A DNA stretch of 63,884 nt, the filler included, from Octopus bimaculoides (taxonomy: Eukaryota): NCBI RefSeq assembly GCF_001194135.2. It is 5 parts of 4 records of this genome, joined end to end, with 100 filler letters (N's around TTAATTAATTAA, not from the genome) between each part and the next. Parts side by side here need not be neighbours in the genome. Positions count along the whole stretch, not along the records: positions 46,198 to 54,405 come from NC_068989.1; 4 more parts are not named here. One strand, given 5' to 3'. The notes below the pieces were generated by a model. That model was not told the DNA's origin, made no database searches, and worked only from the letters and a program-made list of their open reading frames with translations. A program made the translations under genes and the position numbers. Of the stretch, positions 46,098 through 55,275 are shown in pieces. The stretch's first letter is position 1. Each line of letters opens with the position of its first letter.

Positions 46098-48652
46098 NNN
46101 NNNNNNNNNNNNNNNNNNNNNNNNNNNNNNNNNNNNNNNNNTTAATTAATTAANNNNNNNNNNNNNNNNNNNNNNNNNNNNNNNNNNNNNNNNNNNNACA
46201 GACACAAGTACTTGATGTTTATAAAAGGCTGACAAGAGAAATGAAGTGAAACAACTGGGAATGAAAGGCTGCATTATTTACTTCATTCTGCGAAATGTCA
46301 TTTCTTCTAGTCTACCACATTAAAGAGACTGACAGAGAACCACAGTAGAAACTATAACTAACATTTCCTCAAAGACAATGAAATTTGTTCTGGCCACAGA
46401 ATTTACACCAAAATCAATTTTGCTTTCGATTTTCTAAAGGTTGATAAAATATAACATCATTCCTCTACAACAGACTGGAAGAATTTCAAAGTGTTAGATG
46501 AGATGCTTTNNNNNNNNNNCCTCTACAACAGACTGGAAGAATTTCAAAGTGTTAGATGAGATGCTTTGTGAGATTTATTAATGCTCTTTGCATTCTGATT
46601 TCTTAGATGAAGTGGTTTAACACCACCATCATCTGGTTCTGGGATTTCTNNNNNNNNNNNNNNNNNNNNNNNNNNNNNNNNNNNNNNNNNNNNNNNNNNN
46701 NNNNNNNNNNNNNNNNNNNNNNNNNNNNNNNNNNNNNNNNNNNNNNNNNACACACATTCGCAGGAGAAAATATGTTTTTATCAGTGCGGGGTAATGACTA
46801 GTAGCAATGTCTTGTGGTATTTAGTTGTGATTGAATTATCTTCCCCTTATAACAAATATTACATTTGCATTTTCTATCTTGTAGGATCCTTAAATTAAGA
46901 AGCAGACAAAATCCTGGGGTCAGTATAATCCCCTAAAAACACACTTAAAAGGGATGCTTCAGCACGGTCGTAATCCATTGGCAGAATCCAGTAAATGAAA
47001 GAAAAGAAAGAAATGTAACATCACATTTTTCTCAAATATATCCAACATTTTGAACAGGCCTAATCAAGCAGACCTGTGAACAAAGGCATGCCAGATGCGA
47101 TATTCCCATTTTGTATGGCTATCTATATTATGCTAATATGTGCTTTTGTAATTCTTTTAAGATGGTAGAGTGTGATTTGAGGAAATCTTGTCTACAGCAT
47201 CTTGCACGTTGCGGAAGTATGTATGAGTTTCTCAACACTTCAAACGTTAATAAAGCAATAGTGGCCATGTATTGTCACAACCAGCATGCTTGACTAGATA
47301 AAAAGAGAATAACGACATTCACAGCAATCTCAACTACGGGGATATTTTGCTTCAAATTGTAGCAGCTTACGATGGAGAGTTTACTTCAATTCCTAGCAAC
47401 TTCAGAGAGAGTATAGTGGCAAATGGATCCACTATGCTCTCTTTGACGAGAGGTGTAACAGTAAAATCTCCCACAAATCACTTTACATTCTTAAGAAATA
47501 ACGAAAAAAGCNNNNNNNNNNNNNNNNNNNNNNNNNNNNNNNNNNNNNNNNNNNNNNNNNNNNNNNNNNNNNNNNNNNNNNNNNNNNNNNNNNNNNNNNN
47601 NNNNNNNNNNNNNNNNNNNNNNNNNNNNNNNNNNNNNNNNNNNNNNNNNNNNNNNNNNNNNNNNNNNNNNNNNNNNNNNNNNNNNNNNNNNNNNNNNNNN
47701 NNNNNNNNNNNNNNNNNNNNNNNNNNNNNNNNNNNNNNNNNNNNNNNNNNNNNNNNNNNNNNNNNNNNNNNNNNNNNNNNNNNNNNNNNNNNNNNNNNNN
47801 NNNNNNNNNNNNNNNNNNNNNNNNNNNNNCAGCACGGTCGTAATCCATTGGCAGAATCCAGTAAATGAAAGAAAAGAAAGAAATGTAACATCACATTTTT
47901 CTCAAATATATCCAACATTTTGAACAGGCCTAATCAAGCAGACCTGTGAACAAAGGCATGCCAGATGCGATATTCCCATTTTGTATGGCTATCTATATTA
48001 TGCTAATATGTGCTTTTGTAATTCTTTTAAGATGGTAGAGTGTGATTTGAGGAAATCTTGTCTACAGCATCTTGCACGTTGCGGAAGTATGTATGAGTTT
48101 CTCAACACTTCAAACGTTAATAAAGCAATAGTGGCCATGTATTGTCACAACCAGCATGCTTGACTAGATAAAAAGAGAATAACGACATTCACAGCAATCT
48201 CAACTACGGGGATATTTTGCTTCAAATTGTAGCAGCTTACGATGGAGAGTTTACTTCAATTCCTAGCAACTTCAGAGAGAGTATAGTGGCAAATGGATCC
48301 ACTATGCTCTCTTTGACGAGAGGTGTAACAGTAAAATCTCCCACAAATCACTTTACATTCTTAAGAAATAACGAAAAAAGCCACGCATTAGACAGTGTAG
48401 TCGTAGATATAAATAAAAAAAGATGGAATGGTCATTACTAGGAAACCTAGACATAGTTGAACGCGGATGATCTGTGTTTAAACAAACGCAACTCCCAACA
48501 AACTGAACAAAATATAACAATTACGATGCTGAACAGAGATAAGTACACCACCACCACCACCACCACTACTGTTACTGCTGCTGCTGCTGATGATGATGGA
48601 GCTAAGACTACTACTGCTACTGCTGCTATTACTATAGTAAACGAATACTTAC

Positions 48653-48727
48653 AATGGGTCAAAGGAATGTACTTCACAGCCAAAGATTTTTTGGATCTCA
48701 TTGTCAAAACTTGAGTCACCACCAATC
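48653..48727 (-). CDS. METTL24-like: Exon of METTL24/Methyltransf_22-like methyltransferase (motif I region)
   Basis: Acceptor ctttctttatttcaacag, donor TT|gtaagt, 75 nt, phase 2-2. Translates IGGDSSFDNEIQKIFGCEVHSFDP, the family signature GIGxDxSFD...GCEVHSFDP. Confidence 0.92.
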
Positions 48728-49583: not shown

Positions 49584-49995
49584 GGTGGTGGTTGTCTACT
49601 CCTTACACAGAGTTTTACCACCTCCTGCACCTACACCTTAGCCCCTTCATGGCGTCTGATGTGGCTTTTTAAATTAGACAATGTTTTGAAAAAACATCCA
49701 CACAGATTGCACCTCTGATTTGTACTACCATTACCTGCAAGTAAGTTCTGCTCATTGTGGATCCTAACATGTCTTTTATGACCCCCATTGGATTTGCAAG
49801 CCCTCTGGCACACACCACATTCAAACGTGTGCACAGACATATAGTCAGAATAGCTGATTGAGGTTTGTTTTCCATGGGCTCGCAGGTGAGATTTGAGGCC
49901 AGCCAAAGACAGGTATGGTCTGTCACAGACTGTGCACAAAAAAAGGTCCTTGTAATTCACCTTCTCGATCATTACATTCTTCCTTAAATATCTCT
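49584..49995 (-). mobile_element. LINE (RTE-like) 3' end encoding three C2H2 zinc fingers
   Basis: CTVCDRPYLSLAGLKSHLRAH, CGVCQRACKSNGGHKRHVRIH, CNLCGCFFKTLSNLKSHIRRH. No TGEKP linkers, no start or acceptor, short tail ending in (CCA)n. Confidence 0.75.
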
Positions 49996-50016
49996 TGATA
50001 TGCATACATACATACA

Positions 50017-50066
<50 letters not shown>

Positions 50067-50819
50067 CATATATCACACACACACGTGTAGCCCTCACTGT
50101 TTCATTTACTGTCTTGTTCTCACTGTTATGTTCTTGTTAACACTTTCAGCCTCCGCAAAAAATTCCAAATTTGCTTTGCTGGAAGGACTGTTCCAACAAA
50201 GTCGCGTATTGTCCTTGCCTTCGAAACGCGAAGTAGATGGAACAGGGACAACTGACGAAGGGTTATACACTTTATGTTGCATGTCTCGTTTCTCTGTTTG
50301 GTTTTTTTTCGTTGTTCGAAAAAAGTTCCTTTTCTGTTTTCGTTTTTATATTTTCGTTTCTCATTGTGTTTAACGATTTTTTGTGATGTCCTGTACCCAT
50401 ATATGCATGTATGTATACATATAGATGTAGGTATGTACATATATGTATGGATATATGCATATATTTATATATTATTTATATTATATATATATATATATAT
50501 ATACATACGTATATCACAGACATATAGGAAATATATATATACACGAACGCGTGTACAAACATATTTGGTTGACGTTACATGTATTATTTAATAACAGTTT
50601 TACTCAACTCCATAAAACTTAGTTTCGTACGACGTACAACGCAGCTACATCGATACGTATCTGGAGGTCGAAAAACAAGACGCGACAGACTCATAATGGT
50701 TTCGAGATATTAGGCCTGTATTTATAAACTCAGGTCACCTAACAGTATTGTTCAGGATACGACAATCTCTGAATTGTACGTGATGCATTCAACAATTCCA
50801 GATTAGACTCATTAACACC

Positions 50820-51040
50820 CGAGGAAAAAGTATCCGGACTGTTGCCATAGTAACGAAGCTAAAGCACGTAGAATAAAGCCGCTTGCCACAGATTGATCGT
50901 GTAGTCTGCTGTGCATGCGCACTAAATTTTAACGTTCTAGCTTACTTTCGCTGTTTACAGCAGTGGTTGGAAAGGTGTGCAACGTGATTGTCTCATTGAC
51001 CATAACGGACTAAATTCTGCATCAAAATTTGCAATTTGAG
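50820..51040 (+). mobile_element. Mariner 5' end fragment
   Basis: AAAAAGTATCCGGACT TIR-like start, followed by a CIKIC (CIKFC-like) motif. Confidence 0.5.
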
Positions 51041-51590
51041 AAAAGCTTGGCGAAAGAAGTAAGGAGGCATCATATGTCTTTCATTGATGACAACCACTAA
51101 AACCATTACAGTTGTAGGAAATATTGTATGTATAACACTTGGAGATTCAGAAGGATCTGCACATAGCCATCTGTCATTTCTTCTGTTAACTTTTTGATCT
51201 TGGTCGATTTTTTTTCAACTTCATGAACTTCTTAGAATGGTAATCAATGGTCTGTTGAACTTACTCGACAAATTCAGGTGTTCTAATAATTACAAAGCAT
51301 TTAGAATGCTTTTTATGCTTTAATACTAGTGATACATTTCCGTCTTCAGTCTCTAGCTCCTTAAAAGTTTATAGACAAAAAATCTGATAATTTTTAAACT
51401 TCGCGATATTTCTAAATCGCTATGTCCAGCTTTTTATAACCACAATAACAGAATGCCTCTTCATTTCTTGAGTAAGCTGAGGGTCTACCATTATAATTTT
51501 CTGAAACAAAGATTATACGGAGTTAACAAAACATGCGGCAATGACCCCCAAATAAATATGTCCACAAATAACTTACGCACCATATATATA
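51040..51590 (-). mobile_element. maT/Bmmar1-like (DD37D) transposase remnant
   Basis: KRHSVIVVIKAGHS, IRTPEFV, NRRNDRWLC.DPSE, FPTTVMV, NERHMMPPYFF. Confidence 0.7.
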
Positions 51591-51703
51591 TATACAGCTG
51601 AATTACGTACTTAAGTTGAAGCACCAAGTCAGAGCGGTGTTTTCCGTACAACTTAAAATAAAGTGAATAAAATCAAAATAAGCAACAGGATATCAAGATG
51701 TGA

Positions 51704-51789
51704 TGCAGTACGACCGTTTCAAGCGGCTCCATTTAATTGAATAATGCAATCATTACAGGAATTTAAATGCAGGGCTATCCTCGGCTGCA
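51704..51789 (-). ncRNA. Hammerhead motif with long stem II (U4C), left arm of the large fold-back
   Basis: UGCAG-CCGAGGA-UAGC...GCUU-GAAA-C-GGUC-GUA-CUGCA. Confidence 0.55.
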
Positions 51790-53019
51790 TTAATCTGTTG
51801 GACACATTAATATAATTTTACTCAAATTCTCTAATTGAGCAAGAAGAGGGGAGGACTCCATGTTGCTACTAATGTAGTTAAGAATATACTACACATCGAA
51901 GAACTGTATGAAGTTTGTTAGGGTCATAACTTGTAAAGNNNNNNNNNNNNNNNNNNNNNNNNNNNNNNNNNNNNNNNNNNNNNNNNNNNNNNNNNNNNNN
52001 NNNNNNNNNNNNNNNNNNNNNNNNNNNNNNNNNNNNNNNNNNNNNNNNNNNNNNNNNNNNNNNNNNNNNNNNNNNNNNNNNNNNNNNNNNNNNNNNNNNN
52101 NNNNNNNNNNNNNNNNNNNNNNNTGAGTTGACAGTTTATAGTTGGGTATGGTCATAAATATTGTCAGGATCTTAGGATTTGTATAAGTAATTGTCTATCA
52201 AAGAAGCTAGGTAGAGGAAGACCCCAAATCAAGATGTGAATTACCAGTTAAAAGGGCGAGACGTTAATAAAAGCTATGATGTTAATACAGAGGAAATTAT
52301 CACGGGGTACTATGGATGATTGTATATAAACAATATTGTTATGTTGTATAAAGATAAAATTTAATATTACTAAAAATGATATTATAACCATATTTAACTA
52401 TGTGCGCACAGAGTTCAATAGGTATATGTATCTGTGCACAACTTATTTTTACTGATTTTCTTCTGATTCTTAGCTTATAATTAATATAAAGATAATATGA
52501 TTTATCGCCCCAGTATTCCATAAGAAAATACCCAGAGCAATCTTTATAGAAACCACCTAATAAGTAAATAATTAAGTACAGGAATGAATATTAAATTATT
52601 TCTATGTAATCTTCCCTTTCTAATTATGAAAATTAGTATATATACACGTTTTATCCATTCAGGTTATGATATCATGTTTAGTAATCTTAAATTTTATCTT
52701 TATACAACATAACAATATTGTTTATATACAATCATCCATAGTACCCCATGATAATTTCCTCTGTATTAACATCATAGGTTTTATTAGTGTTCTCTTGCCT
52801 TAGATTTAGTAGTTGATAAAAAAAAGACTAATAAATTAAAAATGAACCACAATCCTTTACAAACTATGACCCTAACAAACTTCATACAGTTCTTAGAAGT
52901 GCAGTATATTCTTAACTACGTTAGTAGCAACATGGGCTCGTTCCCTCTTGTTGCTCTATTAGAAGAATTGAGTAAAATTATATTAATGTATCCAACCGAT
53001 TAAGAAGTCTATTTATTTA

Positions 53020-53103: not shown

Positions 53104-53115
53104 TATAACCTCTTC

Positions 53116-53153
<38 letters not shown>

Positions 53154-53183
53154 GTATAGACACATATGTGTGTGAGTACATAC

Positions 53184-53312
53184 CCAAATGAGTATACCAA
53201 GCAAGGCTTCATGGGATAATATTCATTATCCAAACAAACATACCATCCTCCGTCTCCACGAGAACCAATGCGCACTATCTTGTTTCACTTCACCTGAGTT
53301 TGGTTCATAAAT
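53184..53312 (-). CDS. METTL24-like: Exon of METTL24/Methyltransf_22-like SAM methyltransferase, with in-frame TGA at 53285-53287
   Basis: Acceptor tattgcag, donor GG|gtatgt, 129 nt, phase 2-2. Translates FMNQTQVK*NKIVRIGSRGDGGWYVCLDNEYYPMKPCLVYSFG, matching the family motifs RxGxxxDGGWxVC and CLVYSFG. Splices in frame to the 48727 exon (GG+G = Gly). Confidence 0.9.
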
Positions 53313-55275
53313 CTGCAATAGTATTCAACAAATAAATTATTGATTTTTCTTTTACACAGACACAAGTACTTGATGTTTATAAAAGGCTGACAAGAGAAAT
53401 GAAGTCAAACAACTGGGAATGAAAGGCTGCATTATTTACTTCACTCTGCGAAAGGTTATTTCTTGTTGCTCTACAACATTAAAGAGACTGACAGAGAACC
53501 ACAGTAGAAACTATATCTAACATTTCCTCAAAGACAATAAAATCTGTTCTGGCCACGGTGTTTTACATCAAATTACACCAAAATCAATTTTGCTTTCGAT
53601 ATTTTAAAGGTTGATAAAATATAGCATCATTCCTCTACAACAGACTGGAAGAATTTCAGATTGTTAGATGAGATGCTTTGTGAGATTAATTTATGCTTTC
53701 TGCACTTTGAGTTCTTAGATGAAGTGGTTTAACACCACCATCATCTGGTTCTGGGATTTCTTAAGTGGAGTTAATTCTGTTACAAGCATTTTTTCCAGTT
53801 TTCCAATTTAAGAAAATTTACCCTCTTCTTTGCTAGCTTAGGTAGGAAGGTTTGACAGGTTCCAACAGATTCAAGGATTGTATAGTATTCCGATGTCTGC
53901 CTTTGCATGGTTTGTACAGTTGCATGCTCATCCTAATGTTTTTGAGGGAAAATTGGCTGCTGTATCCAGCAAGCCGAATGATCACGTGGATGTGTCTTCA
54001 CTGAGTTGTCAGAATTGTTATTGATGCTATTGAGAAGTCCCGGCCAATTCTTTAGATCTATGGATTCGAGGTAACCAATAAATGACTAAAGCGTGAATAA
54101 ATAAGACCACACATTCAAGACACTCATCTGGTTCTGTATGGTAGTGAAATATACATTATCATCGGATAGGTTTCCTTTGATTTGACTAAGGAGCTTCTGT
54201 ATAATGGGTTGACTTGATAAATAAAACAGGAATATTCTTCCACACACAATTTCTTGACATGGGTCAGCAAACTTCAAGTCTTAAATCTAAGAAAACCATA
54301 ACCTCAGTCGTCAGTTTCGTTTTAATGTCCACTATTTTATGCTCCCGTGAGTCAGGCAAATGGTTGATGTTGATATTATTTGGCTGGATGCCTTTACTTC
54401 CACCGNNNNNNNNNNNNNNNNNNNNNNNNNNNNNNNNNNNNNNNNNNNNTTAATTAATTAANNNNNNNNNNNNNNNNNNNNNNNNNNNNNNNNNNNNNNN
54501 NNNNNATATATATACGAATATGTATATATATATATATATATAGTTTCGATTAGAAGTTGTGTTGGTCTCATGAACGGATGGTTTCATGCAAGCAAATACT
54601 GGCTCAATACCTAGTAATTTGGGGGAATTAGTTTCCTTAAAATAATGAGTACATATATAAAAAATATAGTTAATATTCATGTAAAAGAAGAAAAAGAAAA
54701 TGGAGATTGGGAAGTTAATAATTGTTTATTATTAACAGCAAATTAATCATCTTCTCTTACAGTTATTTCAAATAATAATTAGTAAATATCAAGTAAATAT
54801 TAAGTAAATATTCAGTCTGCGATAATGAATCCATAAACACTTATAAAGCATCCAAGGGTATATTCTTTTCCCTCTGAAGATATTACGCTCAGGTAATATA
54901 TAATAATTTAATATTTACTTAATATTTAAGTATTATTAATTTAAACAGCTGTAAGTGAAGATAATTAATTTGCTTTTAATAATAAGCTATTATTTACTTC
55001 CCAACCTCCCTTTCCTTTTTCTTCTTCTTATATATATATACATATATGACACCTTTATAAAAATGGGTAATTTAGCTGTTCTCCGTAGACTGAAAAAAAT
55101 GATGAACACTCTTAATCGGGTTTCTCATCCGAGGCATCTACATCAATTTGATTTATCCCAGGGAAACAAGTAACAAATTTGTTTATATGCTTAATAATAT
55201 TTATATACATTTGTGTATATACATATATGTGTGTGTATGTGTATATATATGTGTGTGTATGTGTATATATATATG

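What the first reader, a model, noticed from the sequence alone, without database searches (positions are those of the whole stretch)
53184..53312. In-frame UGA at a conserved Cys in an otherwise intact METTL24-like exon: selenocysteine, A-to-I stop recoding, or fresh pseudogene?
Seen: the exon has good splice sites, correct phase and intact motifs (RIGSRGDGGWYVC, PCLVYSFG) but reads QTQVK-TGA-NKIVR (53285-53287). Known: Methyltransf_22 proteins typically have Cys here (Q..C...R.G..DGGW.VC). Inference: TGA exactly at a Cys codon is the classic selenoprotein signature. In a coleoid, ADAR editing UGA->UGG (Trp) is also conceivable, though the 5' G neighbour disfavours it. A simple TGY->TGA nonsense change in a redundant paralog, or a consensus error, is the most parsimonious explanation.
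Basis: partly seen in the sequence, partly recalled or inferred. Interest (0 to 1): 0.75.

Follow-up and report, generated by a model that had tools for sequence, protein, structure and literature searches.

The report
Stop codon in a silent duplicate exon
The in-frame TGA is real DNA, but it sits in one of two near-identical copies of an octopus METTL24-like exon; only the sister copy, with the normal cysteine codon, appears in mRNA, so this is an ordinary disabled duplicate, not selenocysteine or RNA editing.

Summary
On the minus strand, 53312-53184 is an exon with AG/GT borders. It reads FMNQTQVK*NKIVRIGSRGDGGWYVCLDNEYYPMKPCLVYSFG and belongs to Pfam Methyltransf_22 (METTL24-like). The TGA (53287-53285) replaces a Cys found in 37 of 38 family members.

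The TGA is not a consensus error: independent DNA contig sets of the same species carry it. But TGT is also in the DNA. Two runs of one individual give TGA and TGT, and one run's contigs break exactly at 53285. The exon contig has about twice the depth of its copy-specific flanks. Words specific to both flank versions occur in at least 8 individuals. So there are two fixed, near-identical copies.

All 61 raw RNA reads and every RNA contig show TGT, never TGA or TGG. That transcript splices to a different exon 4 than the one in this piece, and the local exon 4 has no exact RNA support. The closest copies in three related species, and the paralogues, all have TGT. No SECIS was found.

Verdict: a recent TGT>TGA nonsense change in a silent, probably partial, duplicate. 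Interest is low.

The parts
53184..53312 (-). Exon 3 of a METTL24-like (Methyltransf_22) gene copy ('copy A'). It has AG acceptor and GT donor borders and is intact except for one stop.
   Evidence: tblastn to octopus METTL24-like proteins P0004, P0074, P0077 and P0079 gives 70-76% identity across the whole exon.
53285..53287 (-). TGA stop at the family's near-invariant Cys codon. The sister copy, the paralogues and other species have TGT.
   Evidence: TGA in DNA contigs of X1, X2, X3 and X6. TGT in X7, X9 and X12, and a contig break exactly at 53285 in X10. RNA reads show TGT 61 of 61. Cys in 37 of 38 homologues.
53212..53212 (-). Second difference from the expressed sister copy: ATG (Met) here, GTG (Val) in the RNA. 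The difference is also in DNA, so it is not an editing site.
53167..53443 (-). 277-nt tract (exon 3 plus 17 nt of intron 3 and 131 nt of intron 2) that is near-identical between the two copies. It assembles as one contig at about twice the depth of the copy-specific flanks.
   Evidence: Contig limits and depths. Copy A and copy B differ only at 53406 within 53356-53443.
53444..53761 (-). Copy-A-specific part of intron 2, 93-96% identical to copy B. Exact-match contigs sit at about half the exon's depth.
48651..48727 (-). Exon 4 of copy A (IGGDSSFDNEIQKIFGCEVHSFDP). It looks intact with good splice sites, but no spliced RNA matches it exactly.
   Evidence: In one search, all ~700 raw RNA reads over 48685-48694 carry paralogue-specific differences.
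46198..46649 (-). 'Copy B': a second version of intron 2, starting 43 nt upstream of where its own exon 3 would lie (just outside the piece). It lies only ~2 kb downstream of exon 4, where paralogues have intron 4 and then exon 5.
   Evidence: Copy-B-specific words are held by most organism-A whole-genome samples listed.

Best explanation
The window, most likely Octopus bimaculoides, holds one of two near-identical genomic copies of exon 3 of a METTL24-like (Pfam Methyltransf_22) gene. It is part of a local duplication of about 7.1 kb containing exon 3 and exon 4.

In this copy a single T>A change turned the near-invariant Cys codon TGT into TGA. The stop falls at about position 63 of the 252-position methyltransferase profile, so any product would lack almost the whole domain.

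This copy does not appear in mature mRNA. All detectable RNA comes from the intact sister copy (TGT, plus GTG instead of ATG at 53212), which splices to a different exon 4. The TGA is therefore a disabling mutation in a redundant, silent or rapidly degraded duplicate. It is an unprocessed, probably partial, pseudogene copy and not a recoding signal.

Shown: the TGA and TGT both exist in DNA; there are two copies; RNA carries only TGT; relatives carry TGT. Inferred: that TGA sits on copy A in every individual; that copy B carries the TGT; and that absence from RNA reflects no transcription or splicing rather than complete NMD.
For: 1. TGA is real DNA. Contigs built independently from runs of four studies (X1, X2, X3, X6) carry it.

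2. TGT coexists with it in the same genomes. X6 (TGA) and X7 (TGT) are the same sample, S6. X9 and X12 give TGT. In X10 the contigs end at 53284 and restart at 53286, an unresolved two-way branch.

3. Two copies rather than two alleles.
- The exon contig depth is about twice that of exact-match copy-A-specific intron contigs: X2 119.7 vs 53.7/59.9; X3 127.5 vs 61.6/51.4; X10 56-73 vs 30.6; X7 33.8 vs 10.6-23.
- Two versions of the start of intron 3 occur at about 47-50 each in X2.
- Words specific to copy A and words specific to copy B are each held by at least 8 samples (S1, S2, S4, S5, S6, S7, S9, S10).

4. RNA. At 53285, 61 of 61 raw reads (X24, X43) give TGT, with none TGA or TGG. RNA contigs of X16, X25 and X30 show the same two differences. 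No organism-A RNA run holds more than 0.57 of the exon's words.

5. The TGT transcript joins exon 3 to an exon 4 (IDTDSSFDVG) that is absent from the piece. The local exon 4 has no exact RNA read among about 700.

6. The closest contigs in organisms B, C and D, and the paralogue loci L001 and L002, all have TGT. Cys is present in 37 of 38 family members.

7. The gene structure is broken relative to paralogues. Exons 5 and 6 are missing, and a second intron-2 copy follows about 2 kb after exon 4.
Against: - Logan contigs collapse near-identical copies and drop minority variants, so TGA:TGT ratios per individual were not counted directly.
- The raw DNA runs gave only about 5-6 reads at the site, with nothing listable.
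- Linkage of TGA to copy-A flanks rests on the assembly and on one 302-nt contig of X1.
- X7's TGT contig reaches 53447 with only three listed differences from copy A. It therefore agrees with copy A, not the assembly's copy B, at 53444, so assigning TGT to copy B is not secure.
- The assembly here is gap-ridden, with artefactual duplications at gaps, so the apparent partial duplication could be partly a scaffolding error.
- A weak unspliced signal over the exon 4/intron border (10 reads in X24, and one contig of depth 5.5 in X25) leaves room for low-level transcription.
- Only two of six coding exons of this copy can be seen.
Confidence: 0.8

Rival explanations
1. Segregating null allele. There is only one locus for this exon, TGA and TGT are alleles, and the apparent second copy is an alternative haplotype mis-scaffolded in tandem.
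For: The assembly is gap-ridden with false duplications at gaps. Different individuals' contigs show either TGA or TGT. Other window-specific variants are minority haplotypes, for example 54067-54140 in X2.
Against: Both flank versions occur in at least 8 samples. The exon has about twice the depth of copy-specific flanks in all four individuals tested. One individual (S6) has both variants, and so does S8. For all of these to be heterozygotes for the same two 93-96% diverged haplotypes is very unlikely.
Confidence: 0.1
2. Copy A is transcribed and spliced normally, but its UGA-containing mRNA is removed by nonsense-mediated decay. On this reading it is a transcribed pseudogene or null copy rather than a silent one.
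For: The splice sites and 131 nt of upstream intron are essentially identical to the expressed copy. There is a faint unspliced signal at the exon 4/intron border.
Against: 0 of 61 reads carry UGA, and 0 of about 700 reads match the local exon 4. NMD rarely removes transcripts that completely. No RNA run in at least 6 studies holds the TGA words.
Confidence: 0.08
3. Selenocysteine. The UGA is decoded as Sec in a Cys-to-Sec METTL24-like paralogue.
For: The TGA lies exactly at a near-invariant Cys in an otherwise intact exon.
Against: No mRNA with UGA was detected. The closest copies in three related species, and all paralogues, have TGT. The local downstream exon is unexpressed. No SECIS appears in the piece even at E<=10, and none appears in paralogue loci at Rfam gathering score. 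The 3' UTR of this copy is not in the piece.
Confidence: 0.01
4. RNA-level correction. ADAR edits UGA to UGG (Trp), or another RNA change restores a sense codon.
For: Coleoids recode heavily (general knowledge). RNA differs from the assembled DNA at this base.
Against: The RNA base is U, not G, which is not an A-to-I signature: 0 of 61 reads show G. The U (TGT) is encoded in genomic DNA of the same species and the same individual.
Confidence: 0.005
5. Assembly or consensus error. The genome really has TGT only.
For: Low-quality, gap-rich assembly.
Against: TGA is present in contigs assembled independently from runs of four studies, 2015-2025. X10 shows a clean branch at exactly this base.
Confidence: 0.01

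Closest known systems
METTL24 / Pfam PF13383 Methyltransf_22 family, molluscan 'methyltransferase-like protein 24' paralogues (e.g. O. bimaculoides P0074 and P0079, O. sinensis P0004 and P0077)
   Same: It shares the exon structure of the paralogues (exon 3 of six coding exons, 129 nt). It has the same motifs (QVKCNKI.R.GS.GDGGW.VC...KPCLVYSFG) and is 70-76% identical in protein across the exon.
   Different: It carries TGA at the near-invariant Cys. It is not represented in mRNA. Exons 5 and 6 are not where the paralogues have them. No annotated protein in the searched collections contains this exon.
Unprocessed (duplicated) pseudogene with a single nonsense mutation
   Same: It is a duplicate of an expressed gene segment with introns retained. 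It has one disabling stop and no mature RNA, and an intact sister copy supplies the function.
   Different: It is very young: 2 differences in 129 nt from the sister, and 1 difference in 131 nt from organism B's transcript. The 277-nt identical tract is flanked by 93-96% identity, which hints at gene conversion rather than simple decay.
Selenoprotein genes with Cys-containing homologues
   Same: An in-frame TGA aligned to a conserved Cys.
   Different: There is no UGA in mRNA, TGA is not conserved in relatives, and no SECIS was detected.

Membership tests
Methyltransf_22 / METTL24-like | Significant match to Pfam PF13383 above the gathering score | tested here: met
   E=4.9e-12, 46.4 bits vs cut-off 22.4, profile positions 55-121 of 252.
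Methyltransf_22 / METTL24-like | Closest proteins are annotated METTL24-like and share the exon structure | tested here: met
   Octopus and other mollusc 'methyltransferase-like protein 24' entries. Exon 3 and exon 4 boundaries coincide with L001 and L002.
Methyltransf_22 / METTL24-like | Open reading frame through the domain (a functional member) | tested here: not met
   Stop at 53287-53285. Exons 5 and 6 are absent from their expected positions.
Selenoprotein gene | UGA present in the mature mRNA | tested here: not met
   0 of 61 raw RNA reads. All RNA contigs read TGT. No RNA run holds the TGA words.
Selenoprotein gene | SECIS element in the 3' UTR | tested here: inconclusive
   No SECIS family hit in the piece at E<=10 or in paralogue loci at gathering score. 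The 3' UTR of this copy is not in the piece.
Selenoprotein gene | TGA, or a Sec/Cys pair, conserved in orthologues | tested here: not met
   The closest contigs in organisms B, C and D all have TGT. Family members have Cys in 37 of 38 cases.
A-to-I recoding site | A>G mismatch between RNA and DNA at the site | tested here: not met
   All reads at the site show U, none G. The U variant is genomic.
Unprocessed duplicated pseudogene | Disabling lesion in a copy that retains introns, with an intact paralogue | tested here: met
   TGA in an exon flanked by introns. A TGT sister is present in DNA and RNA.
Unprocessed duplicated pseudogene | Two loci rather than two alleles | tested here: met
   About twofold depth of the shared tract. 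Both flank types are present in at least 8 samples. This is indirect evidence from contig depths, not read counts.
Unprocessed duplicated pseudogene | No, or negligible, mature transcript | tested here: met
   Limited to the tissues sampled in those runs.

The most novel reading that the evidence does not exclude
The TGA copy is expressed in a tissue or stage that no available run sampled, and its UGA is read as selenocysteine through a SECIS in a 3' UTR lying outside this piece. This would make it a very young Cys-to-Sec conversion in a METTL24-like paralogue. A weaker variant: the 277-nt identical tract reflects ongoing gene conversion that can move the stop into the functional copy.
Probability: 0.01. 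Interest if true: 0.7.

Novelty: already known. Interest (0 to 1): 0.1.

Why it matters
The main value is as a caution. An in-frame TGA at a conserved Cys looks like a selenoprotein, and an RNA/DNA mismatch at that base looks like editing. Here both appearances come from a young duplication whose two copies collapse in short-read assemblies.

It also flags three practical points:
- The expressed member of this METTL24-like cluster (exon 4 IDTDSSFDVG) did not turn up among the annotated proteins returned by the searches made here. One search is uninformative, because that search also missed obvious relatives.
- The reference assembly is unreliable in this region.
- Octopus METTL24-like genes form a multi-copy family with recent turnover.

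Tried and rejected
- The search for homologous proteins with the 67-aa joined exons returned nothing. This is a limit of the word index on a short query, because obvious relatives exist. It is not evidence of absence.
The 33-aa stretch after the stop was used instead.
- Raw 2026 DNA runs (X21-X23) were too shallow: about 5-6 reads at the site, and no variant met the listing rule. Direct TGA:TGT counting therefore failed.
- Calibrating single-copy depth on 50600-51880 mostly hit a very high-copy interspersed repeat. Only 50602-50836 and a few short contigs were usable. They gave intermediate depths (X2 80.8; X3 93.3) and further 1:2 branches, so the calibration is only rough.
- The O. sinensis gene P0077 (L003) proved to be a more distant paralogue (79% DNA identity), not the orthologue. 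L001 and L002 are also paralogues (83-86%) and not the sister copy.
- Rfam hits in the piece are all sub-threshold miRNA models landing on (TA/CA)n microsatellites. They were rejected as spurious.
- Two literature searches on METTL24 (one of them together with octopus) gave nothing relevant to cephalopods or selenoproteins.

Full report
**Observation**

On the minus strand the piece reads ...ttgcag|ATTTATGAACCAAACTCAGGTGAAGTGAAACAAG...CTCATTTGG|gtatgt. The exon 53312-53184 is 129 nt and translates to FMNQTQVK*NKIVRIGSRGDGGWYVCLDNEYYPMKPCLVYSF(G). It has a single stop, TGA, at 53287-53285.

A second exon lies at 48727-48651 (IGGDSSFDNEIQKIFGCEVHSFDP), with cag| and |gtaagt borders. The two exons together match Pfam PF13383 Methyltransf_22 at E=4.9e-12, 46.4 bits against a cut-off of 22.4.

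The 33 residues after the stop were searched against 1.84 billion representative proteins and gave 73 hits. The residue aligned to the stop, 10 positions before GDGGW, is Cys in 37 of 38 scorable cases. Many of the remaining hits visibly show Cys there too.

**Family and gene structure**

The nearest proteins are octopus and other mollusc entries named "methyltransferase-like protein 24". They include O. sinensis P0004 and P0077, and O. bimaculoides P0074, P0078 and P0079.

Mapping them onto their genomic loci (L001 and L002, from GCA_001194135.2) shows six coding exons. The finding is exon 3, and 48727-48651 is exon 4. Both paralogue loci read GTGAAGTGTAAC where the window reads GTGAAGTGAAAC.

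The window is neither of these loci; it is 83-86% identical to them. An O. sinensis locus, L003, is more distant still at 79%.

RNA of "organism A" contains the P0079 exon 3/exon 4 junction exactly. Organism A is therefore most likely O. bimaculoides. This is an inference.

**Is the TGA real?**

Yes. Contigs assembled independently from DNA runs of four studies carry it. X1 is identical to the window. X2, X3 and X6 differ only at 53406, with or without 53212.

But TGT is in the DNA too. X7 comes from the same sample as X6 and gives TGT, as do X9 and X12. In X10 one contig ends at 53284 and the next starts at 53286, an unresolved branch exactly at the third codon base.

**Two copies or two alleles?**

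The piece itself contains a second version of intron 2 ("copy B", 46198-46649). It is 93-96% identical to 53356-53761 and about 7.1 kb away.

- Within 53356-53443 the two versions differ only at 53406. The contigs that carry the exon span about 53167-53443.
- Those contigs have roughly twice the depth of exact-match copy-A-specific contigs: X2 119.7 vs 53.7 and 59.9; X3 127.5 vs 61.6 and 51.4; X10 56-73 vs 30.6; X7 33.8 vs 10.6-23.
- On the other side of the exon, two versions of the start of intron 3 sit at about 47-50 each in X2.
- Words specific to copy A and words specific to copy B are each held by at least eight samples of organism A.

Universal heterozygosity for two such diverged haplotypes is very unlikely. 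I therefore read this as a fixed duplication in which exon 3 and its immediate flanks are nearly identical in both copies.

The depth argument rests on contig mean k-mer depths. Direct read counts were not obtainable, because the raw DNA runs gave only 5-6 reads at the site.

**RNA**

- In two raw RNA-seq runs of organism A, all 61 reads covering 53285 show TGT in transcript sense. None shows TGA and none shows TGG.
- RNA contigs from other studies (X16, X25, X30) carry the same two differences from the window: TGT, and GTG instead of ATG at 53212.
- No organism-A RNA run holds more than 4 of the exon's 7 index words.
- The 53212 difference is also present in DNA, so it is not editing.
- The TGT transcript is spliced at both exon borders. 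It continues upstream into ...ASDLEDLFHG and downstream into IDTDSSFDVG..., which is not the exon 4 of this piece.
- The local exon 4 has no exact RNA support. Of about 700 raw reads over 48685-48694, every one carries differences typical of other paralogues. The dominant one is P0079's exon, joined to ...TKPCLVYSFG.
- There is only a faint unspliced signal at the exon 4/intron border: 10 reads in X24 and one contig of depth 5.5.

**Relatives**

Organism B's spliced RNA contig differs from the window exon at one base in 131, and that base restores TGT. The closest DNA contigs of organisms C and D (about 95% identical) and their paralogues all have TGT. In C and D the closest contig is not at elevated depth relative to the paralogues. 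That is weak evidence that the duplication is specific to organism A or its closest kin.

**Recoding signals**

An Rfam scan of the piece at E<=10 gave only sub-threshold miRNA models on microsatellites and no SECIS. A scan of L001 and L002 at gathering score gave one borderline tRNA hit and no SECIS. The 3' UTR of this copy is not in the piece, so this test is incomplete. The absence of any UGA-bearing mRNA makes it moot.

**Interpretation**

A T>A change (TGT>TGA) hit one of two near-identical copies of exon 3. The stop is at about profile position 63 of 252, so it would remove nearly the whole domain.

The copy that carries it, with its own exon 4, is absent from mature RNA. The intact sister copy is expressed.

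The structure after exon 4 departs from the paralogues. In the paralogues, exon 5 follows about 3 kb downstream. Here a gap and a second intron-2 copy follow after about 2 kb. That fits a partial exon 3-exon 4 duplication, although a scaffolding error cannot be excluded in this gap-ridden assembly.

Selenocysteine, ADAR editing and consensus error are each contradicted by direct data. A single-locus null allele, and an NMD-cleared transcript, remain as minor alternatives.

**Verdict**

Confidence in this reading is about 0.8. Interest is low.

Noticed in passing
window 49631-50080 (-): A 149-aa ORF inside intron 3 with three C2H2 zinc-finger motifs (Pfam zf-C2H2 E=5.6e-8). It is flanked by microsatellites and an assembly gap, and may be a fragment of one of the expanded octopus C2H2 genes or of a mobile element.
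   Followed up: partly
window 50815-51880: A very high-copy interspersed repeat. DNA contig word depths reach 10^4-10^5 against about 50-130 for the flanks, with thousands of contigs laid.
   Followed up: no
window 46960-47259 and 47830-48129; also around the 10-N gap at 46510-46519: 100% identical direct duplications that flank runs of N (a 318-N gap at 47512-47829). This is typical of assembly artefacts at gaps, so the local assembly should not be trusted for structure.
   Followed up: partly
window 52265-52389 and 52662-52786: A 125-nt inverted repeat, 96% complementary, with arms 272 nt apart in intron 3. It looks like a MITE or a foldback element.
   Followed up: no
window 53167-53443: The two copies are about 99% identical only over this 277-nt tract (exon 3 plus short flanks), while the surrounding intron is 93-96% identical. 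This suggests a gene-conversion tract between the copies.
   Followed up: partly
window 53110-53165: A (TA/CA)n microsatellite just downstream of the exon. It attracts thousands of RNA reads and produces spurious sub-threshold miRNA hits (mir-297, mir-1277).
   Followed up: yes
L001 (O. bimaculoides CM046609.1), proteins P0074 and P0078: The annotated isoform X2 (221 aa) of the paralogue is isoform X1 (264 aa) minus exactly the 43 residues of exon 3. Skipping this 129-nt exon keeps the reading frame, so exon skipping could in principle bypass a stop in exon 3.
   Followed up: no
window 54037-54170 and 51066-51179: The window's haplotype is the minor branch (about 1:2 in depth) of two-way contig branches in several individuals. 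This hints at a third related copy, or at polymorphism, in the flanks.
   Followed up: no
L001 8064-8130 (-): A borderline tRNA hit (31.2 bits vs 29 gathering) between two METTL24-like genes.
   Followed up: no
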